DNA of 64,000 nt from Saccostrea echinata (lineage: Eukaryota). The notes below the pieces were generated by a model, which worked only from the letters and a program-made list of their open reading frames with translations, searched no databases and was not told the DNA's origin. The translations under genes and the position numbers were made by a program. Below, piece by piece: positions 14,846 through 56,503 of the stretch (position 1 is the stretch's first letter; each line of letters starts with the position of its first letter). The stretch lies in the NCBI RefSeq assembly GCF_033153115.1, contig NW_026889805.1:4340001-4404000 (forward strand), read 5' to 3'.

Positions 14846-16291
14846 TCACTTATTGTGGACAACATCTAAATAATCATTGTCTTTTATTTCATGTTTTTCA
14901 ATTTCATTTAATGGACTCAAATATTTATCATTGCTTTCTTCGACGCATTCAGCATTTTGATTGGAACTATGACACGTTAAGCTAACCCCGTCCTCGTAAC
15001 TATGGATTGAATCCGAACTATGTACTACAGGCTCTATGATTTCAATATATGCATGCGTTTTTCCACTTGATTCTGGTTCTAGATATCCACCATTATTTCC
15101 CGTGGAGGAAGAGTTTTCGTCGTCAATTTCCCTATAATGGGAATAGTTTGTTTTCATTTCCTGATTTATTTTGGACTTAGGCTCTTCATACTTGGTACCG
15201 AGAGGTTGCGTCATTTCCTCCATTATTATGTTATAACGGTTTCCTGACACTTCGCCTTGATTTACCAGATTTCTATCTATATCAATTTCCTGATATTCGC
15301 CAGATTCGTTTCCTTCCTTAAAGTGTTTTGATTTATTATCGTTTCTATATGTTCTATTGTTATGCAGAACCCATAGTCTTCTCACAACAGCAAAAAGTAT
15401 AGCAATCAAAATTATTATAACAACAGCAGCAAAACCAACCACTATCAGTATAATGGTTAAAATGTTAGGCTGATCCTTTGTTTCTACAGTCGGTGGTTGT
15501 GATGATTTACTCTTTAATTCTGTAGTTAATCTACCTGTTGACCATGAAATCGGTAGTGTAGACGATGATACCTCAAACACTGATGTGACTGGTGATGATA
15601 TTATTGTAGACGATTTATAATTTTCAGATTCTGTAGATATCTCTGAAAAATAAATATGTACCGTGGTTTGTATCAATAATANNNNNNNNNNNNNNNNNNN
15701 NNNNNNNNNNNNNNNNNNNNNNNNNNNNNNNNNNNNNNNNNNNNNNNNNNNNNNNNNNNNNNNNNNNNNNNNNNNNNNNNNNNNNNNNNNNNNNNNNNNN
15801 NNNNNNNNNNNNNAGTAGACATTTTTATTGTCCATGCAAAGGATAAAAGGTTCTTTGGTATCTATTTTATTATTCAGAATTAAAAATTCAAAGATCAGTA
15901 CATGAGGATCCAAGCATATTGATCAGTAAGAAATAAAGGTTAATATGTTTATCTCTATTTTTGGGTGGTAATATATTATTGTATCCTTATACTTGTCTCC
16001 TTTTTCGATTGTTTGTTTTTTCCATGAAGATGAAGGCTGAATAGAAATTTGTTTTCATTCTCTTTTAGAACGGATCAAAAATATTATGATTTTTTATTAT
16101 GTCAGAGTATTTGTTTGTTTGTTTGTTTTTTTAAATTTAAGTTTCTGATTAGAATAAACGTATACCGTCAAGTATAGATGAATCTATTTCGACTGATATA
16201 CAGAAATTGTCATAACTACTTTAAACGTTTACTTTTTTGCATGAGTATAAATATATTTCATTAAATCAATTACCTTTACCATTTTTGTTGT

Positions 16292-16384
<93 letters not shown>

Positions 16385-17510
16385 CATTACTTTCAAAACA
16401 CTATCAGAAGTGATTTTCTTTTATTGTGATTTAATTTATGTTCGAAGGATTTCTTTCATTTTCCACATGTATTCGATCCCTTCAAGTCATTGAAATAAAT
16501 TTATTTTTCCTTAAATTAATAGCAGTTTCTCAGTTAGAAATATTGAATTTCTATGAAAATCAGATATTATACACTGCCTGGATCTTTGAGTCTATAATGT
16601 CCCTTTGTGTACTTTGTTTGAACTTGAGTGTCAAAAATCCTTGACATGACTTTTTAAAATTTCATAAAGTCACTCACCTACCCTTTACCAATACTTTTTT
16701 TTTTTTTTTAATTTTTTTTATGTACATTTAATAAACAAAATATACATATTGCATTGTCTTTGAATCAGAAAAAATAAATGCAGTTGGTTCGTAAATTAAT
16801 AACTTAAGGATATATTTGGAAAGGTAATGCCTCGAGAAAACTCAGCAATACATTATAGTCCCTTAGGAATGATTGCGCGTTACATACATGTACATTACAT
16901 TTTGTATTGTAAAATATAAGTGATTAACATCTAAGTTTTGTTTGCATACCATTCCAGTATCAATTCCAGGTACATAAATATAATAACCACCCCCTTTCTC
17001 TCTCTTTCTCGTAAGCATTTAATATGGTTATAAGAAGGAATTGGCATACCTTTACAGCCTGTGATCTTGTCGCAAACATGCAATGGAGGACATGTACAAT
17101 CTTCCGCACACAGTCGTCCATACGAACCAGATGGACATTCAACGCTACAATTCTTTCCAAAGCTCCCCGCAGGACACTCTAGGTAGAAAGATTCCTTATT
17201 TCTATACATAAAATTCCTCTGCAGTTCATTATTTTGGAAAGTTACCCTATTCTCGCATATAGAAAAACATTGTCTTCTAACTTTCGTTATATATTGTCAA
17301 TTTCATGTTAATAGTAGAAGATAATAAGCTTCTTTGGTAGTGGTAAACGAAATAAACTGCAAGTGTCCATATCTTACCTGCACAAGTCTTGTTTACGTCC
17401 AAAAAGTAATTTACAGGACAATTTGTTGTCCCACTACCTTCATCCGTTAAAGTCAAGTATCTATCGTTCAATAGAAAACAGTAAATCCATTTCATGATAT
17501 GTGTTTTCAT
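14846..17510 (-). CDS. Gene A: single-pass EGF-like (MEGF10/CED-1-like) receptor, ~352 aa. Exons 17510-17378, 17178-17050, 15642-14846
   Basis: Phase-1 GT-AG joins give ..NCPVNYFLDVNKTCA-ECPAGSFGKNCSVECPSGSYGRLCAEDCTCPPLHVCDKITGCK-S/T stalk-TM (ILTIILIVVGFAAVVIIILIAILFAVV)-tail with YQEI, YNII, YEEP, SHYREI, YLEP, YIEI, YLDV. An N gap lies in the last intron. Confidence 0.75.
16294..16380. repeat. (TA)n microsatellite in an intron of gene A
   Basis: Direct. Confidence 0.98.
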
Positions 17511-18800
17511 TTTTCGTACATAGAATTCAACAGGAAACATCTTCATATTGTTTGAAATAGCTCTCCATCGAAGCGGATGTAGACATTCATGAATGAATTT
17601 AGAAATACAGAAAAAAGCAGTATTTTAGCAAATACAAACCGATCTAAAATCGAAGTGTTGATTGAAATGCTGTTAAAAAGGCATTCATTTACCGAATAAA
17701 ATTCCATATTATAACATCAAAGAGAATTTTAAAATAACATTTTTTGTTTTGGTGCCTATCTTCCTGGACCTATAATACACCTGTAAATCAAGTCAAATAC
17801 TCATTGCCTGAGTACTTTTTTGTCTTAGTTTCATTGAAATACAATTCTAATTTTAATTCTTGCAAGTAGGCATAGGAATGCTACGAACGCAGATTCCCTC
17901 TGTTATAAGCTTAGTTTAACTGAATAATGAATTTAATGTAATGTCAAGACCAAGTGGGCTAAATAGTCACTCCAGTTTTTCATGTGTAAAATAATGATCC
18001 CTGAAAATAGGTAGGATTAAGAGACATGTAAATAGCATATTCGTACCTAATTTTATGATTCGTGATTATTAGATTGTGGCTTCCATCGACATTTTTATAA
18101 CCCAAAATTCCTCCAATGGGATTGAACTTGTATTTTACATTACCAAATAAACCAAACAAGTAATTTTGACCCATATTTTGGAAACATAAATCCTAATTGG
18201 AGTCTTGAATAACTCTTATGTAATACCTACAATCACTTTTAGAAGCGTTTGAACTGAAAACCGAACTTTAACACGTGTATGTGATCTGCAGACAACATGG
18301 CATCCTAACCGATTAAATACGTGAGTGGATGCGTATAAAACGCCATATCCGTAGTAACGTCATACATAAGAACGTCATATATAAACAGCGATCAGCTGAT
18401 TGCAGAGACAAATTATGACCTTTTAATCTGAGAAAAAGACATACAATCATGACTAAGGAATCTCGTTAGGTAATTGTCAATTCTAACTTTAATTAATGGG
18501 TGGGAGCTGATGCCTGACCCAAAATTAGGATAATCTATTAATAGGATCATTTAATATATATTTTTAGGTTCATTGTATTAAGTATATAATGTAGAGTGGG
18601 AGAAAGCTATGGGAAAGAGTAACTCCCTCAAGTAAATTGATGCTCCCGCCTGCACCTCTTTATTTAATCTAAATTGTAAGTATTATTTATCATTGTTGCT
18701 AATTATAGAAGACATTTTTCACTACAATTGTATGATTGTGAGAAGCATGATAAGAATTATTTTCAATTTCAGACATTCCTCTTACTTTAATAGTACAGTA

Positions 18801-20548
18801 CCAACCAGACCAAACCTGACACAAAGCAGTCCCAGAGCAGTCCCGGGGACTGCTAAAATTTAATGGGCGGAGCTTACTCAGAATGGGATTACCAATAAAC
18901 AATGTAACTATAAAAGGCAGTTGAAATTGATGATCATTTCTTTCTGAGAAGTATCAACAAATATTTACAATTCTTACGCGACAGTCATTTCTGAACTGTT
19001 GAGAAAACCACAGTACCCGTATAGAAACAAATAATAATTACTGAACGAAGAAGGCGTTCACTCTTATTAAAAACATGAATATTTTAACACAATTATATGA
19101 ATTGGTATATTAATTTTTGACCAAAATAAATAAATTTATTTATTTTCTGTGATTGATATTGGGTTTCATATTTATTTTTTATATAGAAAATTAAACCTGA
19201 ATTGTTTATTTTCTACCAGAATTAGCTTTAAATAGATCTTATAATTATGGAGCGAGGCCGATTCCCATACTATACTCTTAATGCATTTTTCTTAAGTATT
19301 GGAACTTTTGAAAAATTCCTTGTTAATTCTTTGTTAAATTTTGCCGAGTATTATATTTCAGTCATGATTATTTTCAATGACTTGCCAATTTAATTATCGT
19401 TAGATTCTCAGTTTTAAGTGTTTTATTCTATAAATGTTCGAGTGTACATCTGTAAATCACGCGAATGGAACCCTCAGATTATGTTCAAAATTAATTAATC
19501 CCGAAATAAATTTATTCACAATTATTGAAACAAAGACTTTTTGCAGTACATTGATTGAAATTAGTGTCATTGTTGACCAGCGTGTTCAGTGATGTGTTAC
19601 ACTGATACTCAAATAACATGCATTGACTTTCTGCTAATAATGCTCAAAGGCGATTGAAACCTCAGGTGTTGACGCCATTTTATACAACAGTATTGCTTTT
19701 TATTAATCGGTCAGGTAAATAAAAACAAAACAAATAAGAAATAAGTCGCAATTCCCGATATTTTGAAATGTTTATTTTTTAAATAAATGTACTCTTTTAA
19801 TACCTTGTTTATAAATTAAAAACTAATTGATAAATAAATCCCCCAATAATTGTTCACATTATTCATGGGACAGAAGAATGGTAGAATAATTCTATTTCAT
19901 GGTCTTTTAATAAATTATTAGGTTTTATTTGAGGGCGGTAAAAATAGCATGGAGTGCTCTTTTTAAGCATGATATTACCTTTTTCAATTAAGAAAAAAAT
20001 CCAGTACAGTACATCCCTCTGAATATCTTATTGAAATGACAAGTTTTTTTTTTTTTTTTTTTATTTTTTTTATTTTTTTTTTTTATAAATAGTGCTAATG
20101 CAAACTTTGAGTGCATAATTTGACGGTATTAATTTATTAAATAGGCCTAGATAATTTTTTTTCAAACACCTGTATTTTCAAATACCTGAAGTTTAATTAA
20201 AGGGATAAAAATCATCTCCTGAACTTTCCTTTTTAACTACTTTCATTTTTTAAAATTAATTCTAGACTACAATTGTGTAAATTTATACCCCTGAAGACGT
20301 TTAATAATTACATGTATAACTATCTCTACTTATTAAAATTTTGTAAGAAATACTTTTTTTTCTTAAACGCATCTCTGCAGAAAGTAAGCAAAACAACAAC
20401 AGGGAGCTGCAAATTGCGAATACACAAGGGGCGGAACTATCATGTCACTCAGTGGGTCTGCTTTCTAGAGCAGTCCCACAGCAGTCCCTTAGCGGTCCCA
20501 GAGCAGTCCCGGGGACTGCTTTCTGGGACTGTTTAGGTGTCAGGTTGG
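18801..20548. mobile_element. Non-autonomous DNA transposon with TA flanks and subterminal CAGTCCC/GGGACTG repeats
   Basis: Ends CCAACC..TGACAC / GTGTCAGGTTGG, each flanked by TA; absent at the paralogous site ~31298 (ATAGTACATGCAAAC). Confidence 0.75.
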
Positions 20549-21993: not shown

Positions 21994-22184
21994 TCTTTAT
22001 GGATTCCAGCAATTTTGAAAATACATGTAGCTTTATGCATTCAAGAGATATGAGAAAAAAGGTTTGTATGAATTGATATGATTTCACCTACAACATATTG
22101 GCTCAAAAACATTTTGCAATGAAGAAGAGAAGAGCGCATACAATCATACTTAAAAACCGGAATGTCGGGGAAATTTAGGACCGT

Positions 22185-23276
22185 TGACTTTTCAACTTTG
22201 TACACAACCATTCCCCACGATAAATTAAAGTCCAGGCTTTTTGATATCATTGACAGCTGCTTTTTCAATAAAAATGGAACTCGTAAATTTACTTACCTTG
22301 TCATTGGTCATTTGCAAAATTATTTTGTTAAAAACATTCTGATTGTTCACACAAGTACTCTGAAGTTGACATTAAAAAGATGCTTGAGTTTCTGATTGAC
22401 AATATCTATGTAGTTTTCGGAGACCAGGCCTTCCAACAATCTATTGGAATTCCCATGGGTACCAATTGCGCCCCGTTATTAGCAAACCTTTTTTTATATT
22501 CATATGAAGCAGAATTTGTCCAAAATCTTATACGTGAAAAGAAGAAAACACTTGCTGTGGCCTTCAACTCGACATTTAGATATATCGACGACGTATTGTC
22601 AATTAACAATGGCTATTTCCATTCTTATGTCGATACGATATATCCTGGTGAACTTGAGATAAAAGATACCACAGAGTCTGACACATCTGTTTCATATTTG
22701 GATATTTTACTTGAAAAAGACGTTAATGGTAATCTAACAACCAAGCTTTACGATAAACGTGATGACTTTAACTTTTCAATCGTCAACTTCCCTTACTTAT
22801 GCAGCAATATACCTTCATCACCTGCATAGGGGGTATATATCTCTCAGTTGATTCGATACGCAAGAGCATGCTCTACGTATGGACAATTTCTAAAACGAGG
22901 TAAATTACTGACAAATAAGTTGATGAAACAAGAATATCAGCTATCTCGTTTAAAGTCATCATTTCGTAAGTTCTGTCGATACAATGACCTTGTCAGCAAA
23001 TACAATTTATCATTGAGTCAAATGCTGACTGACGTTTTTCACACTAATTGTTAGGCCATTATTTACACACTGAATTGTCGACGGATTTTTCCGTTATTTC
23101 CCGATCATGACAAGGAGCACACGGCGGGTGTGACCGGTCGGCAGGGGATGCTCACTCCTCCATGGCACCTGATCCCACCTCTGATGTTTGGAGGTCCGTG
23201 TTTGCTCTTCTCCTATTTTGTATTGATTAATGGACTTTTGAGCTTGAATACTGTTCGTTTTCTCCATATATTTCAT
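22185..23276 (+). mobile_element. 5'-truncated Penelope-like RT copy (frameshifts, stop)
   Basis: DFSTLYTTIPH..GIPMGTNCAPLLA..FRYIDD; full 3' tail; absent at the paralogous site ~32935. Confidence 0.9.
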
Positions 23277-24283
23277 TTCAATAAACAATTGTGAAAATAT
23301 TAAAGATATTCTGAAAACAATAGATGGAACACAAGTTTTACATCAATTTTATTTTATTTCATATTTATCCAATATATTTATCACATTTCAGTGTGTTCAT
23401 TATCGGTCGGTTCCCGTTGTTTTGTTTTTTATTTGGGGGGGGGATTAATTTTGGTGGAACAAGACAATACATTGTTTTAGTTCCCAATATGTTTATCTTC
23501 TCTAACCAATCTATTTTGTTTGAATAGGATCCCCCATCCTGATAATTATTTTTTTTAAGCATGAGCACGTCAATTTCACTTCAGATCTAAATATTCTCTG
23601 ATATTTCCGGTGGACGTAGAATTTTCCTTGTCAGTTTCGTAATAGATATTTTACATTTCCTTTTCTAGTTTTGACCTTTTTTATAAATACTTTGTTCTCC
23701 CGACATTGTCTATTATTCTATTATTATCCTCCTAAAGCTTAGATCTGATTCACCATCATTACGTTGATGTTGTTATCATTATACATTTCCGATCCACTCC
23801 ATTCCTTGACATTTATTGACTCATTTTCCTTTAAAAGTTTTCTTTAAAAAACTTATTTTTTTTAGCCATGCAAAAAACTAAGTTTGGAAACACACTATGT
23901 TCACCTACAGTTAAAAAAACAAACAAACAAATTTTACTCATCTCCCACACAGAAAAGTTTAATAGCTTTTTAATATTTCTTCCAAATGAAATAATTAGAA
24001 GATGTTTTAATTGTGTAAAATTAAAAATACGACTATACATTGGAACCGTAAATCACATTATCCTTTTACCAAATTATGTGGCTTGCTTAAACAGAAAGTT
24101 GTGTAACTAAACAGAAATCACTTCCATAGTGATGGAGATGCCTATTTTAGCAAAGACGTTTTGAATTTTGGAAGAAAAAAGTGTTATTTATCCTTTAGAA
24201 CAAGATCTAGTAAATGAAATGTGCCTATAGGATTCTCAAATCCTCAAATTTGAGATTTCCATTTTCCATTCCTTTTCAAATTA

Positions 24284-24627: not shown

Positions 24628-24706
24628 TCCTTCTTAAATTATGCTTATTTACTAAGTTAAACGTAGTGAAATAAGATGTATGGGGCAAAATTTCAAGGGA
24701 AACACA

Positions 24707-25092: not shown

Positions 25093-25391
25093 GAAAAATA
25101 AATACGTTTTATACTTGAGTTTACAATGAAAAATGAAGAAACCAGTTAAAAATATTGGAGAGTTTTCCAAATTAGACAAATGATATGCATACAGATTGCC
25201 TACAATATCTCAAAAACAGGTGATTTAAATGTTCTTGAACTCTTCTTTCAGAAATGTTAAATATCTGGATTTTTTTTTTACATGATTTCAAATTGAATGC
25301 CATGAAAATGCGTCATTTTCAACAAAATTCGTTAATACCAATGAAGCAGGGGAAAACGGAAGATTATAATACATGTAGTTATGACGTCATG

Positions 25392-26443
25392 ATGAAATAT
25401 ATGGAGATAACGAACAGTATTCAAGCTCAAAAGTCCATTAAACATTACAAAATAAGTGCAGAGCAAACACGGACCTCCAAATCATCAGAGGTGGGATCAG
25501 GTGCCATGGAGGAGTAAACATTCCCTGCCCACCGGTCACACCCGCCGTGTGATCCTTGTCATGATCGGAAAATAACGGGAAAATCCGTCGACAATTCAGT
25601 GTGTAAATTATGGCCTAACAATTACTATGAAAAACGTTATTCAGGATTTGACTCAATGATAAATTGTATTTGCTGACAAGGTCATTGTATCGACCATAGA
25701 AATTACGAAATGATGACTTTAAACGAGACTGCTGAAATTCTTGTTTCATCAACTTGTTTGTCAATAATTTACCTCGTTTTAGAAATTGTACATACGTAGA
25801 GCATGCTTTTAGGTATCGATTCAACTGAGCGATATAAACCCCGTATGCAGGTGATGAAGGTATATTGCTGCATAAGTAAGGGAAGTTGACGATTGAAAAG
25901 TTAGTCATCAAGTTTATCATAAAGCTTGGTTGTTAGATTACCATTAACGTCTTTTTCAAGTAAAATATCCAAATATGAAACAGATGTGTCAGATTCTGTG
26001 GTATATTTTATCTCAAGCTCACCGGGATATATCGTATCGACATAAGAATGGAAATAACCATTGTTAATAGACAATACGTCGTCGATATATCTTAATGTCG
26101 AGTTGAAGACCACAGCAAGTGTTTTCTTCTTTTCACGAATAAGATTTTGGACAAATTCTGCTTCATATGAATTTGAAAAAAGGTCTGCTAATAACGAGGC
26201 GCCATTGGTACCCATGGGAATTCCAATAGATTGTTGGAAGACCTGGTCTCCAAAAACCACATAGATATTGTCAATCAGAAACTCAAGCATCTTTTTAATG
26301 TCAACTTCAGAGTACTTGTGTGTACAGTCATAATGTTTTTTAACAAAATAATTTTGCAAATGGCCAATGACAAGGTAAGTAAATTTACGAGTTCCATTTT
26401 TATTGAAAAAGCAGATGTTAATGATATCAAAAAGGCTGGATTT
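25392..26443 (-). mobile_element. 5'-truncated Penelope-like RT copy (frameshifted)
   Basis: ORFs 25901-26461 and 25615-25920; absent from the duplicate at ~34640. Confidence 0.9.
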
Positions 26444-26569
26444 TGATAGTTTTAAGACCAAAAAAGGCAGTATGAACTCATACCTTTGTCATTACATCTT
26501 TACCTTAAAAGTCAGTCTTAAGTGATGTGAGAGAATTTCATGACTTCAAGCAGGATTTCTTTATTAATT

Positions 26570-43668: not shown

Positions 43669-45077
43669 CTCTACAGCCTTTGATTCTGTCGCATCTGTCG
43701 GGGGAACATTGACAAGATTTTGCGCACAATTTCCCATATGTGTTGTTTGGACATTTCTTACTGCAATTCCATCCAAATGTTCCTGGAGAGCACTCTAATA
43801 AGAAATACTTCACTTTTCATGTGAATTAAAAAAAGAAATCATATACTAGCATGATTTCACAATTTTTTTTTAAACTAATTGTTAGGGCATTATTTATAAA
43901 CTGAACTGACTAAGGATTTTTCCATTTTTTTCCCGATCATGACAAGGAGCACACGGCGGGTGTGACCGGTCGGCAGGGGATGCTCACTCCTCCATGGCAC
44001 CTGATCCCACCTCTAAATTTTGAGGTCCGTGTTTGCTGTGCTCCAAATTTGTATCGTTTCATTGAACTCTCGATATTGAATATTGTTCCTTATCTTCATA
44101 TTTCATTCTTTCTTATTGTTTAGTGTCTCCTTTTTTACAAACACTGGTGCTTAGTTTTCTTTCGTGTTACTACTAAGCGTTAAAAACTCCTAAAGGCTGT
44201 TAATAAATAAAATTATTGATTGATTGTTTGTTTGTTGTTTTACGTCCCGTGCGAGAATTTTTCACTCAATTTGAGATTTCACCATTTATACCGGTGAAGG
44301 GCTTCAAACTTAGACCTTTACTCGGCGATCAGGGCCATTTAGCAGTGAGGGTTCTTTATTGTGCCAACGCCTGTCGTCACACTGTGCTTTGGATTTTAAG
44401 GTCTAAGCTGAAGGACCCGCAACTTTCACTTTAAAGTACAGAACGCTTGGCGAGAAGCAGCCGCAACCTTTTTTATTGACTTAGGTCAGTCTCAGCCGTG
44501 GTTTGAACCCACGACCTTTCGATCACGGAGCGAGCGCTCTAACGACTGAGCTACCGTGTGACGGTTAAAAGGATATGGCTTTCAGAGGCGGAAAATTCTT
44601 TATATTGACATTACAGTATTGATCTGTTCTGTTATCAAATACAGATATATAAATTGTGGATACTTCCCCACGTGATCAAACAGTGGAATTTCTTTGTTTT
44701 AATATCTGAAACAGCAAAATACATGCTCATGAGTTGGAAATGTAACGATCAGAATTTGATACTTCTCTCAATCGCTGTTGACAATACATGTACCTTACCT
44801 GAAGCGTAATATAGTATTTGAATAACAGAATTTGAGATATGCTATATGCACTGAATTTATGTCTTGAAGTTGATATACATTTAAAATTTATCTACGTCCA
44901 ATCAAATATCAACTTACCTTTACAAATCCTGTCAAAATCCAAAAAATAATTGACACAGCACAGTTTTTGAGGGTATGTTTGGTGATAGCATCCTGTATCG
45001 TTTATTTCTTTTGTCACATTCCTGCAGGACCAAACAATTGTTATGAAATAAATCCATTTTAAGTCGTGAAACTTCAT
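43669..45077 (-). CDS. Gene D: divergent family member, first two exons (45077-44918, 43794-43669); 3' exon not identified
   Basis: MKFHDLKWIYFITIVWSC (signal-like)..GC..LCCVNYFLDFDRICK-ECSPGTFGWNCSKKCPNNTYGKLCAKSCQCSPDRCDRIKGCR; phase-1 GT-AG. Confidence 0.65.
43845..44107 (+). mobile_element. PLE 3'-end fragment in the gene D intron
   Basis: ..AAACTAATTGTTAG followed by the conserved tail. Confidence 0.8.
44213..44566 (-). mobile_element. tRNA-derived SINE in the gene D intron
   Basis: Reverse complement has TAGCTCAGTCG, GGTTCAAACC and the same body and tail. Confidence 0.8.
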
Positions 45078-46409
45078 GACACATCCAAAAAATTGAAGAG
45101 GAAAAAACTATATAAGGCGTCATAAATGTAAAACATTGTCGATATTGGAATTTTAAAAAAAAATTGATTACGTATACAACACAATAAACCGTACACTAAT
45201 TAAAAAAAAAGATTTATTAATAAAAGAAGAAGAAAGATCTATCTAAGAAGAGTTGTTTTATGATATATCAATATGATTTTTTCATGTCTTCTGTCACTTT
45301 TTTTCCCTCAGATAACCCAATGTGATCTGCTCCTGTCCGCCGGCGTGCTTTATGCTGGATGATTTAAACACTTTCATCTTCCCTTCGTTTTTGAGATGCC
45401 TTAACCAATTTCAATCAGTTTTTCACATACAATCTATGTATTGAAGAGGGGGGGGGGACTTAACTTCATGATGATAGTTCCCTCCTGGGGTTTTTAAAAG
45501 GTTTGACTAAAACCATTTAGGTTCATACAATCATTGAAAAAATCTTTTTTCATTTTGAAAACTAGCAAGTAAAGTGGTTTTATTATTACAATGAGCTGCT
45601 AATCATCTATCAAAATTTGAAATACAGGACCTTTTGTTTCTAGGGTTTATACCCCCTGAGTTGGCTTATTCTATCTTAAAAATGTACTGATAAAAAACAG
45701 TTGCCTTGAATATTTTTTTTCTTCCTTATTCTTGAATATCTTTTAACAAACTGTTTAGCAATTACTTGACCGATCAACAGAAGAGGCTTACTCTTCTTGA
45801 CTCCTGATCCGACCTCGGGTTTTTCCAAGGGTCTGTTTTGATTAATTTTTGAAAATCATGACAATTTTGTCAGGGATTCGTGTCCCAGTTGGGCTAAGTT
45901 GGTCATTTATTGCAGATATTTGACAGTCTAAAAGTCTCTTTACTCTCAGATATCTTGTAAGAAGTTTACATGAGGCTTACTCCTCCTAGGTACCTGATAC
46001 AACCTCTGACAGTTCCAGGGCTCCGTGTGTTGTGCCCTCTTTAATGATTTGTATTGTTTATGGATATTTTTATAGATAGATCACTGTTATCTTTACCTTT
46101 TCATGAGGGTCCAGTTTTTGACTATCCTTGTCATATAATTTTTTTATGTAAATTATGTCATCTAGAATTTTTATTCATACATAAAGAATGCAAACTTCAA
46201 AACTATATGCATGATAGCAGTTCTTTGTTTTATTATGATATTTGTTCCAAGGAGACCCCATAGAAGTATGGCTATGTTGAATATTCATTTAAAACACATT
46301 GAAAATATTCTTTACTCCCTAAAATTAAAAAGACAGACTTACCACAGTGTGATTATAAATCTTTTACATTCAACAATAATCAAATTTGCAAAATTTATAT
46401 CATATATCT

Positions 46410-46673
46410 CCTAAGTCTAAAGTTTCAGTCCTACGTGGGGCTGAGTAGGTCATAACCGAGATTCTCAAGCCACCGTCAAGGTCCAGTGAGCTCTTGTTAC
46501 ATAAACAGGTGATTTTCATGTTAATCAGATGTGGATATTTTCCTAAGTCTAAAGTTTCAGTCCTACGTGGGGCTGAGTAGGTCATAACCGAGATTCTCAA
46601 GCCACCGTCAAGGTCCAGTGAGCTCTTGTTTCATAAACAGGTGATTTTCATGTTAATCAGATGTGGATATTTT
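46410..46673. repeat. 132-bp near-perfect tandem duplication
   Basis: Units start at 46410 and 46542; one mismatch seen. Confidence 0.9.
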
Positions 46674-46719
46674 AAAACGCAATAGAACGCTTAAAAAATT
46701 TGAAATCACAAAATTTTAC

Positions 46720-47130: not shown

Positions 47131-48159
47131 GTTAATAACGAGGACCTTAAATCACTTGTTTTAAAACGTCCAAAATTTAGGGAATCCCGATCTTTCAACT
47201 GGTGTCATCATTTCATACATAGAAAATTACACCAGACGATGGGCTAAACATGATTTAAAAAAATTTAATAAGAAATTAAAAGTATCAAATGAATGTTGAA
47301 ATCTCGCATTAAGCGATTGAGGGCAATATGAAAACCATCTATCCCTTTATTATACCGTCGACATTCTGTTCTATTATTTTCAATTTTCTTCCGCCATCTT
47401 CTTGTTGTTATAAGCTTTTGATCAATTTTTAAAAGTTTGTGATTGAACTAATCAGTATTATTGTTTTTTGTGCAGTGAAAATAATGTTTTGGGGGAAATC
47501 AGGACAAATGAGATGAAATCGTGTGTAACTAGATGACAAAATGTCTGATGTTTGCTGATTTCCCTTTTGTTTGTGAATCCAAGATTTCGTCATTTGTTAC
47601 TTTTACTTTTAATAAATGACATATTTCATTCTCACAAATATTGTCCTGTTTTATAAGTCACTTTAAGCAATAACAGGCTTCGGTGAGCTGTTTGTAAGGA
47701 AAATAGACATACTAGATATAATTCAGGAAAAGAAAATTAGATAATATTGGAGAAAGTATAGAAAGAACAAAAAGTTTACCCTGTAGCCAAGAAGATATTA
47801 ACAACATTTTTGTCGTTTATGGTGTAATTGTTGCACCAGGCCCATGTCTTGAGCAATCTTATTTTGTAATAAATGACAATGCTTGCAAAAAAGTTCGTGT
47901 TGGTCTAAGTGTTGTGGTCTCTTTGGTTGGAAGATTTCCCTACACATTTTTAGGTAGGACTTTGAAGTACCTCATTGACTTATTTCTGTCCAATAGGGTC
48001 AAGGTATGAACAAACTTTTAATCTAAAATTTATTAAAATGTTTGATGTACTGAGATATTCAATTAGCAATATGAAATATTTTTTCTGAGATTTTAAAATC
48101 ATTTCAAAAATGACACAATCCAGATTTTTACATCCCTTTTATTTTCCTTTCAAATTGAA

Positions 48160-49677
48160 TTACAAAACATTCACAACATCTAAATATTCATTATTTGCCG
48201 ACTCGTGTGTTTTTGGATCATTGCGTTTTGTGGAGCAAGTCTTGTTACAACGTGCTAGGTTCCCAGTATCTTGATACTCCTCTAGTTCATCTAGATCTGA
48301 TTTGTTTGAAGAACTTCTCCCATCCTTATCATCATTTAAGGAATTAGATTTATGAATCAAAGGTTCTATAACTTCTATGTATGCATGAACTCGTCCACTT
48401 GATTCCGGTTCTAAATATTCTCCGTCTTTTCCGGTTGTATTTTCCTTATCAATTTCATGATCGGTTTGTTTTATTTCCTCTTCTATTTTTGACCCTATGT
48501 GTAAATATTTTGGTCGTATTATATCATCCTTTATTCTATTATAACGATTGTCAGGCATCTCATTCGCTATCATTTCGTCTAGGTTTATTTCATGATACAC
48601 TTCCAATTCATTTCCTTCCTTAAAATGTCTTGATTCATTTTCTTTTTTGGGATATTTTTTCTTAGAACGACTAGAAAACAATTTTTTGGCTATTGTCGAA
48701 AGTATTATTAGAAAAAGAAAAGCAATCACTCCTCCCATTATTATTATTATTAGCGTATTATTATTGGCCTCTTCTTTTGTTGCTATCGTCGGTTCTGGGG
48801 AAGAATCCTTACTTGTTACCTTTGTAGTTGATTCTGTTGTTCGTCTAGAAGTTGCCTTAATTGGCTCAGACGACTCAACAGAGGTTGCGAGAGATATGAA
48901 CGTTGACGTTTGAATTGTTGTTTCTGGAAGTAATCAGAAAATCAGAGAGGGTCAAAATTAGTCTTTTTAAATACCAATGGTCTTTGAGAAAAAAATTCTA
49001 CCTTCAATTTTTTATAGATTGCACACCTTTTTATATTTATGTTAATTTTTTAAAGTAGCATTTAAATAGAATGTGCGTATGTCTTAAGTATCATGCTTGT
49101 TTTAAGTTGTATTTTTTAAGACATTAACTTTTCATATACCTTTAATAACACAGCCAAATGCTCGGTCACAGTAAAAATCAGATGTACATTTACACTTTTT
49201 TCCACATAGTTTTCCATAAGAACCAGAAGGACAAGTCTGTGTGCAGTTGTCACCAAAGTATCCAAGCTCGCATGCTGAAAACAAAGACTGCATATATTAC
49301 AATTCTACAAATACTCAGTGTTATAATACACCAATACAAAATATCTCGGATATGTGAAAATTGATTAAAATTTAATCATTCGTTTTCATTTAAAAAAAAA
49401 CAACTCTTCTACAATATAAATTATACAACTATAGGAAATGGAAAAATAATTAGAACAATCTTAGTAACAAGTGATCACACTTACGCAAACAACTATTCTC
49501 AGCTTCACTCCAGTAATGGCTAGTGCAACATTTTTTGTCATTTGATCTAAAGGTAAATAATAGAATTTACTACCAATACAGACAATTAACATTGATGCGG
49601 TAAGGGATAGGTAAGTTGAAACATAAGATGAAACTTACCTACCGCAATCGGCAGGTGTCATTATTTCCAGACGACAT
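48160..49677 (-). CDS. Gene E: single-pass EGF-like receptor with ITAM, ~331 aa. Exons 49677-49643, 49546-49485, 49274-49140, 48923-48160
   Basis: MSSGNNDTCRLRSNDKKCCTSHYWSEAENSCLPCELGYFGDNCTQTCPSGSYGKLCGKKCKCTSDFYCDRAFGCVIK-stalk-TM-tail containing DNRYNRIKDDIIRPKYLHI; exon sizes and phases identical to gene F; start codon uncertain. Confidence 0.8.
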
Positions 49678-49918
49678 ACATTTCATCAAGTTATAGCAGG
49701 AGACATATACGGCGTTGTAGTGTTAAAATAACGATTCCTATATTTATTTTTAGCACTACAAATAGATTTGGTGGATCTAGTTTGTAAATATAAATACCTC
49801 ATATTGGTGTGCGAGTTAGCTAAGCGGTTTTCCTCAAACTCTTGTTCCTGGATTTTATAGTGTCTCTTAAAAATAAAAAAAAAATAACAAACGAAAACAA
49901 ACGAAAGTTTGAGAAAAC

Positions 49919-50063
49919 TGATTACTAACGAGTACTGGTGATTACTAACGAGTACTGATTGATTACTAACGAGTAATGGTTGATAACTAACGAGGACTGG
50001 TTGATTACTAACGAGTACTGGTGTGATACTAACGAGTACTGGTTGATTACTAACGCGTACTAG
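49919..50063. repeat. 21-bp minisatellite (TGATTACTAACGAGTACTGGT), about 7 copies, upstream of gene E
   Basis: Direct periodicity. Confidence 0.9.
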
Positions 50064-50397
50064 TTATGGGACCTGTTTATCCAATTATACAAACATTGAT
50101 TTACATGTATATGTTTTGGTGTAATAAACATGCCACTGATTAAATTGCATATCCCGATAGTATATGTCCCTAGTAATATACCTCGATGATCCGTGGAAAT
50201 AACATAACAAGGAAAAAAAAATCGCTGATGTTTCCGAACATACTCTGTACCTACATTTTTGCGACCATAAGTATGAACTTTGGAGAGAAGACCTTAGAAA
50301 AGCAGCCAATTAGAATCGTCGTAGGTACGCAGTATATTTAAGGCGCCAAGTGGAAATATTGCCAATTTTTATGACAGATTAGTTGATGTTATAGGAT

Positions 50398-52280: not shown

Positions 52281-54942
52281 ACTTTCGTCCAAACATAGGT
52301 CGTGACGTTTATGCAATTGTTCAGGAATTGTGATTCTTTTCTTTTGAATTTTAAAATTTTGTTTAAAGCAGAAATTTTACAGTGCATTTGCTTTTTAGTT
52401 AATAACGGAGGTAACTATGTCACATATTCTAGAGTAATCGCAGAATTGGTATTTATAGACTAGTTTCCAACCATAATCATGATCCATACTTCTCAAGAAG
52501 TTATAAAAACTTCGGGCAGTCCTTTTTTGAAGTTTTTCATCATATTTGTCGTTTTTCAAGCGCCTTTTTCATGGGATGACCACTTCGAATATCCTTGAAC
52601 CATTCTTTTGCCAGATATAAACCAATGTCTGAGACTCGTTTATGTCATTTCATCGTTTCGAGCTCTTCTTCCTACGGACAGGAGTTATTCCCCCACTTAA
52701 AAAAGGTATTGAATGATTATTTGGTGTGCTGCATTATCACCAGTTTTTTGGCAATATTTTTGGCCATTTTTGGCAATTTCCATGGAAATTGTGCATTTAA
52801 CGCCATATTTATATTATTGCCATCTATAATGTCAAACTTATGAATTTTAACACATTAGTACCTAAGATCATAGGGATTTTGTCGAGGTAAATTTTATCAC
52901 ATTATATTTCAGTATTATCTGGTAATAAACAAAACATCGCTGACGATGCTTTTCTTAAAAAGTGAAAAAATAGCGGTGCGCCGATTAGCTATATTTCACA
53001 TCCTTTATATACTATTTAGATTCATATGCCATTACAAACTCATAATACTATCTCAAAATAACAAAAATATCATTTGCAACCATTGTACAAAAAATTAATA
53101 AGTTTGGTCAGTTAATTTAGAAGGTATTTAAAAATCCTCGTATATTAAGCATCTTTACTTCGTGCATTTCTTTTCCCCTACTGATTCAAAAAATAAGTAG
53201 AGGAAAGTACCCATTTAACGCCCCAGGGTGGGGCTAAATCGGTTAAATATTCAATCGCATATTGTATTTTTTTTATAGTGTATATTTAAGGAATTGTAAA
53301 TTTAGATTTTAAAAATGTAGACAAGTAGATTTAAATTACACGAGGCCTTACATGTCAATTTCAATAGTCCCCGCCCACTGACGTCAAACACAATGGCAGC
53401 CGCACGAGAATTACATGCATATAAGACCTCCTTAGCGTCAGACACAAAGACAGCCGCACGAGAATTACATGCATATTAGGCCTTCTTAGCTCCTGACCTT
53501 TCGCTTGGCGAAATTTGCATTCCGGTAAAATGATCAAGAAATCAACTCAACTAACTTTCAAAGAGTTATCAAAGAGAAAACAAATAGAAATGGAAATATT
53601 TGAAATTTATCTTTGATAATAGCTATTACTTTAACAGACTCTTCGAATGATGGTCCTTCCCTTTTCCTCTTTTACTAAATTGTTTTGTTTTTTCCCAAAG
53701 GTGTAGTTCCCGAGAAGGAGTAGTTCAATTGAACATTTATTTAAAATGCATTATATCCTTACTTCTGAGCAAGGAGACAAAGTTTATTCATTGTAATTAT
53801 AAACAGAATTAATATCAACAGTCTCGTTTAAAGTCGTCATTTTAACTTTATTAAAAAAAAAAATTAGTCAAAGAAAATCACATGAATACAGAGTCCTACT
53901 CCAAGATGGAACTGATTGTTCATCGACTGAGATACTCAGGTACCTTCATGCCTCTAGGCCTCTACATACATTATTAATGAATTGGTTTTTATTATTTTTT
54001 TCTTTTTTGATAAGCTAAAATCATTGTTTCTGAAAAACATAAACACACTGATCATCAAAAACGTCTTTGACGTAAGCAGCATCCAATTCGATGGTAAACA
54101 ATGGTGCTGTCCTGTTGATAACTAGTTTGAATTTTTACACTAATCATAAGGCCATGAGTATAGTCCTCCAAGCTGTATCATCCGACTTTCATGCTACTAT
54201 TCATTGCTGGAAAATATCTGAAATCCATCTAAATTTGTCATACATTTAAAAATTTTAAGCCTTCAATCTTTCAAAAGGTTTCAATGATTTTCCCTATACA
54301 TTTATACGTTTACATTATAGCCTCATCCCTGCGTAAGAGTAAATGGTTTGGGAAAAAGTCGATTTAATATTACTCGAGAATGTTGGGACATGTATTTGCT
54401 ACATGTATGTAGCCTAGAATGAAATGTTCAAACATTTTTTGTCAACATTTCTTGCTTTTAAACTATTAACTCCTTCAATGATAAAATTCTTGCATCAGGC
54501 TCATGTCTCTAGCAAACTTATTGTATAATGCATGACAATGCCTGCAGATAAATTAAAGAAGTTGTAGCGCTCCAAAAGGAGATATTTCTTGCAACATTTT
54601 TACTTAAAACTTTGAACAACCTCTTTGGCTTCATCCTTGCCAGATGGGGCCATGGTTTAAAAAAAATTGAAACGTAGTTCTTTTTTCTATGCTACAGTTT
54701 CTATTTCAAATATTAAAATTGCATGTTAATTCATTTTCATTGCAATTTCCTCGCACAACTTAAGCACATCACATATGGTAAACACTTGAAAATCGAAATG
54801 TCGGGAAAATTGTTGATAAGTTCCATATTCAATTAGCAATGAGTAGGCGTGAGATATTGTGTAAGATTTAAAATAAATACATATATATGTAACTAGATAC
54901 AACACGGAATTTTATATCAATTTTATTTTCCTTTCAAATTAA

Positions 54943-56503
54943 TTATAACACATTGACAACATCTAAATATTCGTTATTTGTCGATTCATGTGTTTTTGGA
55001 TCATTGATTTCGGTGGAAGAGGACTTGTCACTCTGTTCAAAATTCACAGTATCTTGATACTCCTCCAGTTTATCTGACTTGTTTGAGGAACTTCCCTCAT
55101 CTTTGTCAGTATTTAAAGAATCAGAGTTATGTATCAAAGGTTCTATAACGTCTATGTATGCATGAACTCGTCCACTTGACTCCGGTTCTAAATACTCTCC
55201 ATTATTTCCGGTTGAAGTTGAGTTTTCCTTATCAATTTCATGATAGGTTTGTTTTATTTCCTTTTCTATTTTTGAACCTATTTGTAAATACTTTGGTCGC
55301 ACTATATCGTCCATTATTCTATTGTAACGATTGTCGGGCACCTCAATCTCATTCACCATCATTTCGTCCATGTTGATTTCATGATACATTTCCGATTCAT
55401 TTCCTTCCTTAATATTTTTTAGTTCTTTTTCCTTTTTGGAATATTTTCTCTTTGAACGTTTAGAACAAAATTTCTTAATCACTGCTAAGATTATTATTAG
55501 AATTAGAAAGGCTATTACTGCTCCCATTAATAATACAATGGTGTTATTATTTGTCTCATTATTATTTGTCTCTTTCTTTGTTGGCATAGTTGGTAATACT
55601 GATGATTGCTTTATTGTTATCTCTTCAGATGAAACAGTTGTTATCCAAACCGGTATCAAAGTTGTTTTGTTTCGTTCAGACGACGTGGCAGAAGTTGACA
55701 GTTTTATTGACCTTGAGGTTTGAATTGTTGTTTCTGGAAGTAAAGAGCAGAATGGGTTCAGATATCTTCTAGATCTTTATCAATACATCTTAAAACATAC
55801 TAGTATAATTTGTTTTAATTATTAGAATGCAAATTGTCTCATAATTATATTATATAGTATTCAAAGTCTAAATGAAGTATTCAGTTGTCATGTCTATTTA
55901 AAGTTGTACTTTCTCGATAAAATAAATAATTATTAGTACCTTTAGTAACACAACCAAACACTCTGTCACAGTAATAACCAGGCAGACAGTTACACACTTT
56001 TCCACACAGTTTTCCATACTGACCCGGAGGACAAGTGTGAGTACAGTTATCACCAAAGTATCCAATCTCACAGGCTGAAAATGAAGAATAATTGTCTGAA
56101 TTCTTTATAATTCCTCAATGTTGTATCAATACAAATACTTTCCTGGATGTTTGGCAATTGAAAAAATTCAATTATTTCTTTACAATTATGAATAATTGCA
56201 CCTACTCAAGGAAAAACAATCATAATAAATCATTTGGTTTCCATTACGAAAAAAGGAATAAAATAAACATAAGTAAACGAAGAAAAATATAATTATGACT
56301 ATAATGCTAGCATCAGACTTACGCAAACAATCATTCTCATCATCACTCCAGTAATAGTTGGCGCAGCATACTTTGTCATCTAAACTAAAAATAAATAAAT
56401 AAAATTACCTTTAAATTTCAACAACTAGTATTACTGTAATATTGGAATATTAGCTGAAACATACCTACCGCAATCTGCAGGGTTCATTATTTCCAGATGA
56501 CAT
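54943..56503 (-). CDS. Gene F: single-pass EGF-like receptor with ITAM, ~340 aa. Exons 56503-56469, 56384-56323, 56074-55940, 55733-54943
   Basis: MSSGNNEPCRLRLDDKVCCANYYWSDDENDCLPCEIGYFGDNCTHTCPPGQYGKLCGKVCNCLPGYYCDRVFGCVTK-stalk-TM-tail containing DNRYNRIMDDIVRPKYLQI and ending EYLDVVNVL. Confidence 0.8.

What the first reader, a model, noticed from the sequence alone, without database searches (positions are those of the whole stretch)
14846..56503. Tandem cluster of miniature EGF-like receptors with divergent signalling tails: candidate paired immune-receptor locus
Seen: seven co-oriented paralogs (A, B, B', C, D, E, F) that only appear after manual splicing. They share a Cys module and one EGF-like exon, then differ in output: ITAM tail (E, F), ITAM-less Tyr-rich tail (A), very short tail (B), no TM (C), unresolved (D), dead (B'). 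Known: Draper/MEGF10/CED-1 signal through ITAM-like motifs with Src/Syk-family kinases, and clustered paired receptors are typical of immune recognition. Inference: a fast-evolving invertebrate recognition system that automated pipelines would label only 'MEGF10-like' or uncharacterised. I cannot verify novelty without a search.
Basis: partly seen in the sequence, partly recalled or inferred. Interest (0 to 1): 0.85.

Follow-up and report, generated by a model that had tools for sequence, protein, structure and literature searches.

The report
Oyster mini-EGF receptor cluster, ITAM-like tails
This stretch of the black-lip rock oyster genome holds a real tandem cluster of small membrane-protein genes (one EGF-like head, a stalk, a membrane anchor, a tyrosine-rich signalling tail) from an oyster-wide family that databases call only 'uncharacterised' or 'MEGF10-like'; an immune role is plausible but not shown.

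Summary
The window is Saccostrea echinata. All units lie on the minus strand.

- **The units:** each has a Cys-module exon, one 8-Cys EGF exon and a stalk/TM/tail exon. Introns are phase 1 and GT-AG.
- **State of each copy:**
  - A, E and F are intact.
  - E is transcribed and spliced as predicted, shown by RNA contigs.
  - B has an in-phase short-tail TM exon.
  - C is a partial duplicate that never carried a TM or tail, and it has lost a cysteine and a splice acceptor.
  - B' lost its EGF exon.
  - D has no TM exon and no RNA.
  - At least three more units (G, H, I) lie beyond the window.
- **The tail:** it defines a family seen only in Ostreidae among named hits, with seven near-invariant tyrosines. 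These include a YxxI/L-x6-12-YxxI/L pair, found in 29 of 39 tails against about 1.8 expected by shuffling.
- **The ITAM:** E, F and G fit the strict ITAM. A and its S. cucullata ortholog both lack it.
- **Selection:** dN/dS is below 1 everywhere, so fast evolution of the head is not shown.
- **Signal peptide:** E, F and G have none.
- **Family membership:** this is not a MEGF10/Draper member. It has no EMI domain, one EGF and no NPxY. It probably works like one.
- **'Paired immune receptor':** this remains a hypothesis.
- **Earlier notes:** this scan noted other ITAM-like receptor clusters elsewhere in the same genome.

The parts
14846..15642 (-). Gene A exon 3: stalk, TM and 183-aa Tyr-rich tail. 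The ITAM pair is broken (YNII-x11-YEEP). One ITIM-like SHYREI motif. C-terminal YLDV. Stop codon at 14846-14848.
   Evidence: Acceptor tttttcag|AG and open frame. Motifs. The S. cucullata ortholog P0010 has the same YEEP and SHYREI.
15682..15813 (.). Assembly gap inside intron 2 of gene A, not in coding sequence.
   Evidence: The acceptor lies 38 nt below the gap. The gap's flanks are colinear with paralog C.
17050..17178 (-). Gene A exon 2: 8-Cys EGF-like exon, 129 nt, phase 1-1, with an NCS sequon.
17378..17510 (-). Gene A exon 1: start codon, weak signal-peptide-like N-terminus and Cys module (C-PVNYFLD-x5-C).
23389..23831 (-). Decayed relic of an E/F-type cytoplasmic tail, with stop codons.
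   Evidence: tblastn. One search reports 2 TGA and 3 TAA inside. 75% DNA identity to the F tail.
22186..23308 (+). Copy of a reverse-transcriptase-bearing interspersed repeat, inserted into the B-side copy of the segmental duplication. An inverted copy lies at 25391-26447.
   Evidence: blastn finds many copies at 87-96% identity. Weak RVT_1 hit.
29113..29360 (-). Gene B exon 3: stalk, TM and a 13-residue tail (the short-tail exon type). An alternative in-phase acceptor would start the exon at 29348.
   Evidence: The same exon type, with a longer tail, occurs in S. cucullata P0003 and O. edulis P0011.
30030..30155 (-). Gene B exon 2: EGF-like, 8 Cys, 87% aa identical to A.
30347..30479 (-). Gene B exon 1: start codon plus Cys module, 85% aa identical to A.
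33253..33460 (-). Second decayed tail relic, the duplicate of the one at 23389-23831.
   Evidence: The segmental duplication 20.6-31.3 kb ~ 31.7-38.5 kb is shown.
37355..37522 (-). B' exon-1 remnant. The first ATG is lost and 10 codons are deleted. The EGF exon is removed by a deletion equivalent to A 17042-17290.
38477..38650 (-). Gene C stalk-exon fragment. Homology to A stops at A 15528 and is followed directly by the B' upstream region. The acceptor AG is mutated to AC.
39129..39381 (.). Assembly gap in the intron-2 equivalent of unit C.
40086..40211 (-). Gene C exon 2: EGF-like, with one conserved Cys replaced by Phe (GSFSKNFS).
40402..40534 (-). Gene C exon 1: start codon plus Cys module.
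43669..43794 (-). Gene D exon 2: EGF-like, 8 Cys, phase 1-1. No TM exon lies between it and unit C.
   Evidence: No RNA contig covers it.
44918..45077 (-). Gene D exon 1: good signal peptide plus CC-VNYFLD Cys module. It resembles the first unit of S. cucullata P0002 and P0003.
48133..48923 (-). Gene E exon 4: stalk, TM and 179-aa tail. Stop at 48160-48162. The RNA contig ends at 48133. Strict ITAM at 48496-48552.
   Evidence: RNA joint 48923|49140 in runs X1 and X2. Motifs.
49140..49274 (-). Gene E exon 3: EGF-like, 135 nt.
   Evidence: Both RNA joints are GT..AG on the minus strand. Sequence.
49485..49546 (-). Gene E exon 2: Cys module (KKCC-TSHYW-x6-C), 62 nt.
   Evidence: RNA joint 49274|49485. 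Sequence.
49639..49710 (-). Gene E exon 1 (5' end inferred). ATG at 49661 gives MTPADCG. There is an in-frame TGA upstream and no signal peptide. A second overlapping start frame has a tandem donor 3 nt upstream.
   Evidence: About 70 nt of the 1060-nt contig lie upstream of exon 2. N-termini of S. cucullata isoforms X1 and X2 support both frames.
54943..55733 (-). Gene F exon 4: stalk with three NxT sequons, TM and 179-aa tail. Strict ITAM at 55279-55335.
55940..56074 (-). Gene F exon 3: EGF-like, 135 nt.
56323..56384 (-). Gene F exon 2: Cys module.
56465..56487 (-). Gene F exon 1, coding part: MNPADCG. No signal peptide.

Best explanation
This is a tandem, birth-and-death cluster of an oyster (Ostreidae) family of small single-pass membrane proteins.

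**Architecture.** Each intact gene encodes a roughly 70-residue disulfide-rich head: a CC-x-x-Y Cys module plus one 8-Cys EGF of the MEGF/Tie2/SCARF1 type, carrying an N-glycosylation sequon. After the head come a Ser/Thr-rich stalk, one TM helix, a basic stop-transfer stretch, and a disordered tail of about 180 residues.

**Tail motifs.** The tail carries seven near-invariant tyrosine motifs:
- a membrane-proximal YxEI;
- a YxxI/L-x6-12-YxxI/L pair, which is a strict ITAM in E, F and G;
- YLEP;
- H-x-YIEVIE;
- Y-x-D;
- a C-terminal YLDV.

**Most likely mechanism (inferred, not shown).** A ligand or particle clusters the head. A Src-family kinase then phosphorylates the tail tyrosines. The doubly phosphorylated pair recruits the oyster Syk kinase through its tandem SH2 domains, and the other phosphotyrosines dock further SH2 proteins. 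This is how Draper, MEGF10 and PEAR1 work, and how the oyster receptor CgIgR works.

**State of the copies.** The locus grew by nested segmental duplication, repeat insertion and deletion.
- E, F and A are intact, and E is shown to be expressed.
- A is an old lineage with a lost ITAM.
- B combines an A-like head with a near-tailless anchor.
- C, B', two tail relics and probably D are decay products.
For: **Shown**
- Paralogy and exon structure.
- Spliced RNA contigs in two coded organisms and studies cover E. Both introns are GT-AG, and a 1060-nt contig ends 27 nt past the stop.
- The tail profile finds 123 representatives (39 at E<=1e-10). All named ones come from S. echinata, S. cucullata, Ostrea edulis, Magallana gigas/angulata and C. 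virginica.
- Invariant tyrosines persist across paralogs only 26-71% identical.
- The ITAM regex matches 29 of 39 tails, against 1.8 expected from composition-preserving shuffles.
- Purifying selection acts on the tail (dN/dS 0.25-0.30) and the head (0.28-0.44) at dS 0.4-0.6.
- AlphaFold2 gives the head pLDDT 81-91, one TM helix and a disordered tail.
- The family profile hits Tie2 EGF3 at E=4.5e-5 with all Cys aligned, and SCARF1 at 0.03. The fold matches are Tie2 at Z 4.2 and SCARF1 at Z 3.2.
- Duplication blocks and deletions are mapped.
- A is a 1:1 ortholog of S. cucullata LOC134230465, while E, F and G form a species-specific clade.

**From the literature**
- An ITAM-Syk-ERK axis exists in oysters (CgIgR, PMC6994640).
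- Draper signals like an immune receptor (PMC6219719, abstract seen).
Against: - No phosphorylation, kinase-binding, ligand, tissue or infection data exist for any member.
- E, F, G and most database relatives lack a signal peptide. The N-out topology therefore rests on inference: an even Cys count, NC[ST] sequons, a mucin-like stalk and the positive-inside rule.
- Ten of 39 family tails lack the motif pair. Spacing in the 29 that carry it varies from x6 to x12, and one window-genome paralog that lacks it spaces the aligned tyrosines only 3 residues apart.
- The shuffle control ignores relatedness among the tails.
- Only E has RNA support.
- Pfam gives no significant hit for either the head or the tail.
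Confidence: 0.6

Rival explanations
1. The locus is a paired activating/inhibitory immune-recognition locus. Near-identical heads are coupled to opposing outputs: ITAM in E, F and G; ITIM-like in A; tailless in B; secreted decoy in C and D. The system evolves fast under pathogen pressure.
For: - The A and B heads are 85-87% identical but have a long tail and a 13-residue tail respectively.
- A has lost the ITAM and carries SHYREI (S-x-Y-x-x-I). Both states are conserved in its S. cucullata ortholog.
- S. cucullata RefSeq isoforms of one locus join the same N-terminal exons either to an ITAM tail or to a short-tail TM exon.
- Clustered birth-and-death is evident.
Against: - The short-tail TM has no charged residue that could pair with an ITAM adaptor.
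- There is only one ITIM-like match in a tail with 11 tyrosines, which is easily chance.
- Head dN/dS is below 0.45, so diversifying selection is not shown.
- C was born truncated, has lost a Cys and its acceptor, and D has no RNA.
- There is no haemocyte or infection expression evidence.
Confidence: 0.2
2. The exons belong to one or a few long multi-EGF (MEGF10-like) transcription units. The 'miniature genes' would be artefacts of manual splicing.
For: - Every junction is phase 1, so any unit can splice in frame to any other.
- S. cucullata models P0002, P0006 and P0008 chain exons of neighbouring units.
- S. echinata RefSeq P0009 fuses two adjacent units.
Against: - E's RNA contig runs from its own start exon, which has an in-frame stop upstream, to 27 nt past its own stop.
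- Each intact unit has its own ATG, TM and stop codon.
- No joint from E into D was among the joints listed (six more were not shown), and no contig covered D's exons.
- Fused models such as P0009 have two TM helices and look like annotation merges.
Confidence: 0.08
3. The proteins are not receptors. One possibility is membrane-anchored EGF-like ligand precursors, which like pro-neuregulin have no signal peptide and shed the EGF head. The other is transmembrane adaptor scaffolds for Src-family kinases, like LAT, SCIMP or LIME.
For: - No signal peptide, a tiny head and a long conserved tail.
- Language-model look-alikes of the tail are Src-substrate TM adaptors: poxvirus A36R, SCIMP and LIME1. 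All score below 0.9, so they are leads only.
Against: - The EGF is the 8-Cys MEGF/Tie2/SCARF1 type, not the 6-Cys EGFR-ligand type.
- The head is under purifying selection and well folded, which argues for a binding role.
Confidence: 0.1

Closest known systems
Draper / CED-1 / MEGF10 / PEAR1 (Jedi-1) engulfment receptors
   Same: - Single-pass receptors whose ectodomain uses the same atypical 8-Cys EGF type.
- A CC-x-G/N-Y/W motif ahead of the first EGF.
- A disordered tail with an ITAM-like YxxI/L pair used by Src and Syk/Shark kinases.
- Relatives of the window genes are auto-named MEGF10, MEGF6 or PEAR1-like.
   Different: - One EGF instead of about 15-17.
- No Pfam-detectable EMI domain.
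- No NPxY motif.
- No signal peptide in E, F and G.
- A mucin-like stalk.
- A different, family-specific set of seven tyrosine motifs.
- Tandem multi-copy organisation.
Tie2 EGF-like domains and SCARF1 (SREC-I) N-terminal EGF repeats
   Same: These are the best sequence-profile and fold matches to the head. The Cys spacing C-x2-G-x-[FY]-G-x2-C-x3-C-x2-G-x-YG-x2-C-x3-C-x-C-x5-C-x4-G-C aligns throughout.
   Different: In those receptors the EGF repeats sit inside large multi-domain ectodomains with kinase or other tails. The similarity concerns the module only.
CgIgR, the ITAM-bearing Ig receptor of Crassostrea gigas (PMC6994640)
   Same: An oyster single-pass receptor with a classical ITAM, shown to recruit CgSyk and activate ERK. 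It proves that the downstream pathway exists in oysters.
   Different: It has five Ig domains rather than a mini-EGF head, and its tail sequence is unrelated. It is a single gene, not a cluster.
Vertebrate paired receptor clusters (KIR, Ly49, PIR/LILR, SIRP)
   Same: Tandem clusters of similar heads with long or short tails, showing birth-and-death evolution.
   Different: - In those clusters the long tail is inhibitory (ITIM), and the short-tail form is activating through a charged TM residue and an ITAM adaptor.
- Here the long tail itself carries the ITAM.
- The short-tail TM has no charged residue.
- The ITIM evidence is a single weak motif.

Membership tests
MEGF10 / Draper / CED-1 family | N-terminal EMI domain | tested here: not met
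   No EMI hit in Pfam for the exon translations or for ten full-length relatives. Only the CC-x-x-Y...C motif remains.
MEGF10 / Draper / CED-1 family | Many (about 15 or more) tandem atypical EGF repeats | tested here: not met
   Each unit has one 8-Cys EGF exon.
MEGF10 / Draper / CED-1 family | Cytoplasmic NPxY motif | tested here: not met
   The regex finds none in tails A, E, F, G, H or I.
MEGF10 / Draper / CED-1 family | Single TM plus an ITAM-like YxxL/I pair in the tail | tested here: met
   E, F, G and H carry it.
ITAM (D/E-x2-Y-x2-L/I-x6-12-Y-x2-L/I, as defined in PMC6994640) | Sequence consensus in a cytoplasmic tail | tested here: met
   E, F and G match strictly with x8 spacing and the upstream D. 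H matches with x11. A does not. The looser regex, without the upstream D/E, matches 29 of 39 family tails against 1.8 expected.
ITAM | Phosphorylation by a Src-family kinase and binding of the Syk tandem SH2 domains | not testable with these tools
   This needs biochemistry. The pathway's presence in oysters is known from PMC6994640.
EGF-like domain, MEGF/Tie2/SCARF1 type | 8-Cys pattern and EGF fold | tested here: met
   The family profile hits Tie2 EGF3 at E=4.5e-5 and 6u11_A at 9e-11. pLDDT is 81-91. Fold matches are weak: Foldseek probability 0.99-1.0 but E about 0.05, and VIA Z 4.2. Pfam gives only sub-threshold EGF_PEAR1L.
Paired activating/inhibitory immune receptors | Near-identical ectodomains with different tails | tested here: met
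   A against B: 85% (Cys exon) and 87% (EGF exon) aa identity, with a 183-aa tail against a 13-aa tail.
Paired activating/inhibitory immune receptors | Short-tail member has a charged TM residue for an ITAM adaptor | tested here: not met
   B's TM segment contains no K, R, D or E.
Paired activating/inhibitory immune receptors | An inhibitory member with an ITIM | tested here: inconclusive
   A has one S-x-Y-x-x-I motif (SHYREI), conserved in its ortholog P0010. A single match among 11 tyrosines could be chance.
Paired activating/inhibitory immune receptors | Expression on immune cells and response to pathogens | not testable with these tools
   Run identities are coded and their tissues are unknown.

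The most novel reading that the evidence does not exclude
Oysters may have a lineage-specific family of signal-peptide-less (type III, N-out) mini-EGF receptors. Uniformly phase-1, modular exons would let neighbouring units be spliced together. One locus could then combine recognition heads with an ITAM tail, an ITAM-less/ITIM-like tail or an almost tailless anchor. That would be a combinatorial activating/inhibitory recognition system of invertebrate immunity, built on an EGF scaffold rather than an Ig or lectin scaffold.
Probability: 0.15. Interest if true: 0.8.

Novelty: new variant of a known kind. Interest (0 to 1): 0.55.

Why it matters
ITAM signalling outside vertebrates is known from very few receptors: Draper in flies and CgIgR in oysters. 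This finding defines, with exact exon coordinates, an oyster-wide multi-copy family that no Pfam model covers and that public annotation calls 'uncharacterised' or mislabels as MEGF10, PEAR1 or MEGF6.

The family offers three things:
- a compact, testable candidate for Src/Syk-coupled recognition in bivalve cells;
- a natural series of tail variants for structure-function work: intact ITAM, lost ITAM conserved across species, and near-tailless;
- an unusual case of a disulfide-rich EGF head with no signal peptide.

It also warns annotators that phase-1 modular units in such clusters are easily fused or skipped. In one search, an S. echinata protein of 152-485 aa should have matched the tails of E, F and G, and none was found.

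Tried and rejected
- **Pfam:** single exons and ten full-length relatives gave only sub-threshold hits (EGF_PEAR1L, EGF_STAB1-2, TMEM154), so Pfam names neither the head nor the tail.
- **Frame error corrected:** my first A-tail query was out of frame (the error showed). It was redone in frame.
- **RNA for D:** no contig covers D's exons in four runs. This is no proof of silence. The high depth at 43850-44650 comes from repeats.
- **RNA for A and F:** not testable. One read-laying run of at most 6 kb was allowed, and I spent it on D plus E.
- **Further D exons:** I searched the window for the extra exons seen in S. cucullata P0003 (a second Cys+EGF unit and a short-tail TM exon) and for any TM-like open frame between D and C. 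None was found.
- **Foldseek against PDB:** no match at E<=0.001. The VIA Z of 4.2 is within the range of common arrangements. The EGF assignment therefore rests mainly on the sequence profile.
- **Protein atlas:** all tail look-alikes scored below 0.9 and are leads only.
- **Literature:** nothing was found for PDB 6U11 or for six gene or protein ids of relatives. The oyster haemocyte atlas text gave no link to this family.
- **Joined spliced models:** Exons were searched one by one by reference. Whole-protein work used database proteins of S. cucullata and other oysters. In one search only the substitution counts of two exons were pooled.
- **Searches not used:** I ran no further search on checking whether A is annotated in S. 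echinata.

Full report
**Source and orientation.** The window is G000:C56:4340001-4404000 of a 923-Mb assembly. Contig C56 is 22,588,512 bp long. That is exactly the contig length recorded for three Saccostrea echinata RefSeq proteins hit by my profile, and one of them (P0009) matches locus L011 of this genome by eye. The genome is therefore the black-lip rock oyster. GC content is 26-38%. All units described here lie on the minus strand.

- tblastn with the translated exons finds seven co-oriented units in the window. E-values run from 1e-7 to 1e-99.
- I fixed the exon borders from the sequence. Every donor is GT and every acceptor is AG. Every junction is phase 1, and the EGF exon is a symmetric 126-135-nt module.
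- There are two subfamilies.
  - A, B, B', C and D start with an exon that holds the ATG, a hydrophobic N-terminus and the Cys module.
  - E and F (and G just outside the window) have a 23-nt coding first exon (MxPADCG), a separate 62-nt Cys-module exon, the EGF exon and a last exon of about 770 nt.

**Assembly gaps.**
- The gap at 15682-15813 lies in A's intron 2, 38 nt above the acceptor AG at 15644-43.
- The 355-aa ORF that reads through this gap is an artefact of N being translated as X.
- The gap at 39129-39381 lies in the matching intron of C.
- The flanks of each gap are colinear with the paralogous unit, so nothing suggests a misjoin and no exon is touched.

**RNA evidence.** No listed run is on record as RNA. 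Even so, Logan contigs of runs X1 and X2 (organism A, 2025) skip exactly 48923|49140 and 49274|49485. Both skipped stretches are GT..AG on the minus strand.
- One 1060-nt contig covers exon 4 down to 48133, which is 27 nt past the stop. It also covers exon 3, exon 2 and about 70 more nucleotides upstream.
- Run X5 (organism B, 2018, a second study) covers parts of exon 4.
- Gene E is therefore transcribed and spliced as predicted. This removes the first refutation condition and argues against the 'one long gene' condition.
- The upstream 70 nt fall just outside the stretch I laid. I place them at 49639 to about 49710 for three reasons: the exon there ends in a canonical donor, it encodes the same N-terminus as S. 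cucullata isoform X2, and its last three letters explain the 3-nt overhang of the alignment. This placement is inferred.
- D's exons had no contig.

**State of each unit.**
- *A, E and F* are intact.
- *B* shares A's upstream region and first two exons (A 16838-18797 against B 29819-31302, 85-89% DNA identity). It then has its own 3' end, with a TM exon whose acceptor at 29362-61 is in phase. The cytoplasmic tail is 13 residues.
- *The B exon type* recurs at window-relative 73161-73535. With a longer tail, it also occurs in S. cucullata P0003 and O. edulis P0011.
- *C* is colinear with A only from A 18497 to A 15528, and is followed directly by B's... upstream region of B'. It is therefore a partial tandem duplicate that never had a TM or tail. 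It has also lost one EGF cysteine (Cys to Phe) and the acceptor AG of the stalk exon.
- *B'* lost its first ATG, ten codons of exon 1 and the whole EGF exon.
- *D* has a good signal peptide and an intact EGF. No TM-like frame lies between it and C, and it lacks the further exons that its S. cucullata look-alike has.
- *Two tail relics with stop codons* lie at 23389-23831 and 33253-33460. They belong to a roughly 10-kb segmental duplication (20.6-31.3 kb matching 31.7-38.5 kb). Copies of a reverse-transcriptase repeat were inserted into it.
- *Beyond the window,* the cluster continues with G (tail at 64991-65760), H (74346-75152) and I (90581-91441). More distant kin lie at 12.4 and 14.4 Mb of the same contig.

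**The family.**
- A profile of ten tail exons of this genome (A1) finds 123 cluster representatives among 1.84 billion proteins, 39 of them at E<=1e-10.
- Every named one comes from Ostreidae. Their names are 'uncharacterized protein', 'MEGF10', 'MEGF10_11', 'MEGF6' or 'PEAR1(-like)'.
- No paper was found under six of their identifiers.
- Although identity falls to 22-28%, several motifs stay invariant or nearly so: a membrane-proximal YxEI, two tyrosines forming a YxxI/L pair, YLEP, H-x-YIEV, Y-x-D and a C-terminal YLDV.
- The ITAM regex matches 29 of 39 tails, against 1.8 expected from shuffles of each tail. The tails are related, so this is not a probability. The persistence of the pair across such divergence nevertheless indicates constraint.
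- E, F and G fit the strict form (D-x2-YNRI-x8-YL[HQE]I). H has x11 spacing.
- A has YNII-x11-YEEP, and so does its 1:1 ortholog in S. cucullata (100/100 support). The loss is therefore old and maintained.
- A and that ortholog also carry SHYREI, an S-x-Y-x-x-I match.
- No tail has NPxY.

**The head.**
- AlphaFold2 on S. cucullata P0001 with an 18-sequence family alignment gives pLDDT 81-91 for residues 11-70. It also gives a TM helix at 131-175 and a disordered tail.
- The family profile hits PDB chain 6u11_A ('EGF-like domain-containing protein') at 9e-11, Tie2 EGF3 at 4.5e-5 with all cysteines aligned, and SCARF1 at 0.03.
- Fold searches rank Tie2 and SCARF1 first, but weakly: Foldseek E about 0.05 and VIA Z 4.2 and 3.2.
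- The head is thus one EGF of the MEGF/Tie2/SCARF1 type, preceded by a CC-x-x-Y motif that recalls the end of an EMI domain. Pfam does not detect an EMI domain.

**Signal peptide.**
- E's ATG at 49661 has an in-frame TGA 24 nt upstream in the same exon.
- E, F, G and most database relatives start M...C...CC with no hydrophobic leader.
- Four features point to an N-out orientation: an even number of cysteines, a conserved NC[ST] sequon in the EGF, NxT sites with a Ser/Thr-rich stalk, and a strongly basic stretch after the TM.
- That would make these type III membrane proteins. This is inference only.

**Selection and history.**
- Among E, F and G (dS 0.4-0.6), dN/dS is 0.28-0.44 for the head, 0.39-0.57 for the stalk, 0.10-0.29 for the TM and 0.25-0.30 for the tail.
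- This indicates purifying selection throughout and gives no sign of a fast-evolving head, although pairwise averages can hide a few selected sites.
- A, B and C are young duplicates (dS about 0.1). The A-C EGF ratio of about 1 fits relaxed constraint in C, but rests on very few changes.
- The tree shows old lineages shared with Ostrea (A/H type and I type) and a species-specific E/F/G expansion.

**Cross-unit splicing.** S. cucullata LOC134230486 has seven RefSeq isoforms.
- X1-X3 are F-like, with an ITAM tail.
- X4 and X5 are D-like, with three EGFs and a short-tail TM exon.
- X6 and X7 join the F-like first two exons to the D-like EGF exon and run on to the short tail.
- Because every junction is phase 1, such chimeras stay in frame.
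- These are predicted models. In this window the analogous E-to-D joint was not seen.

**Comparison with known systems.** The locus probably works like Draper, MEGF10 or PEAR1, with an EGF-type head and an ITAM-like tail read by Src and Syk kinases. Oysters have the pathway (CgIgR-CgSyk-ERK, PMC6994640).
- It is not a member of that family. The EMI domain, the multi-EGF ectodomain and NPxY were all tested and not met.
- The paired-receptor reading has one feature met (similar heads, different tails), one not met (charged TM residue), one inconclusive (ITIM) and one untestable (immune expression).

**Verdict.** This is a real and previously undescribed variant of ITAM-type EGF receptors, in an ordinary birth-and-death cluster. 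The immune and 'paired' claims remain hypotheses. Other notes of this scan report further ITAM-like receptor clusters with lectin-EGF heads elsewhere in the same genome. I did not test whether their tails are related.

Noticed in passing
window 49639-49690; 56465-56510; L012 about 2459-2500: The first exons of E, F and G hold two overlapping start frames: MxPADCG, and M(K C M)SSGNN.CRLR. Two candidate donors lie 3 nt apart (G|GTAG|GTA.GT). Either frame continues in frame into the Cys-module exon. S. cucullata RefSeq isoforms X1 and X2 use one frame each.
   Followed up: partly
L012:1955-1965 (window-relative about 65960): G's EGF exon ends CAAG|GGTAAA. The only GT is one base out of phase with the phase-1 acceptor of exon 4. 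This could be an assembly indel in a G-run or a recent inactivation of an otherwise intact gene.
   Followed up: partly
window 49919-50065: A 21-bp unit repeated 7 times (88% matches) lies 210-360 bp upstream of E's inferred first exon.
   Followed up: no
window 8827-9889 and 11851-12946: A 36-bp satellite array of about 30 copies, with arrays of the same unit in inverted orientation about 2 kb away. The long ORFs there are repeat artefacts.
   Followed up: no
window 5546-6609, 22186-23308, 25391-26447, 59266-60773 and others: A high-copy interspersed repeat with a reverse-transcriptase fragment (YIDD motif, weak RVT_1 hit), 87-96% identical between copies. Another note of the scan calls it Penelope-like, which I did not test.
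   Followed up: partly
L011 / P0009 (C56 about 12.41 Mb): The S. echinata RefSeq model XP_061164906 (738 aa) runs through the end of one family member's tail into the Cys module, EGF, TM and tail of the next. It has two TM helices and looks like a merge of two tandem genes.
   Followed up: no
L014:1-1152 and L012:9161-9535 (window-relative 73161-75152): Next to H, a short-tail TM exon of the B type lies just downstream of the long-tail exon. An O. edulis model (P0011) splices the two together. This raises the possibility of alternative 3' terminal exons giving long-tail and short-tail isoforms of one head.
   Followed up: no
window 46409-46673: A 132-bp unit repeated twice at 99% identity, between D and E.
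   Followed up: no
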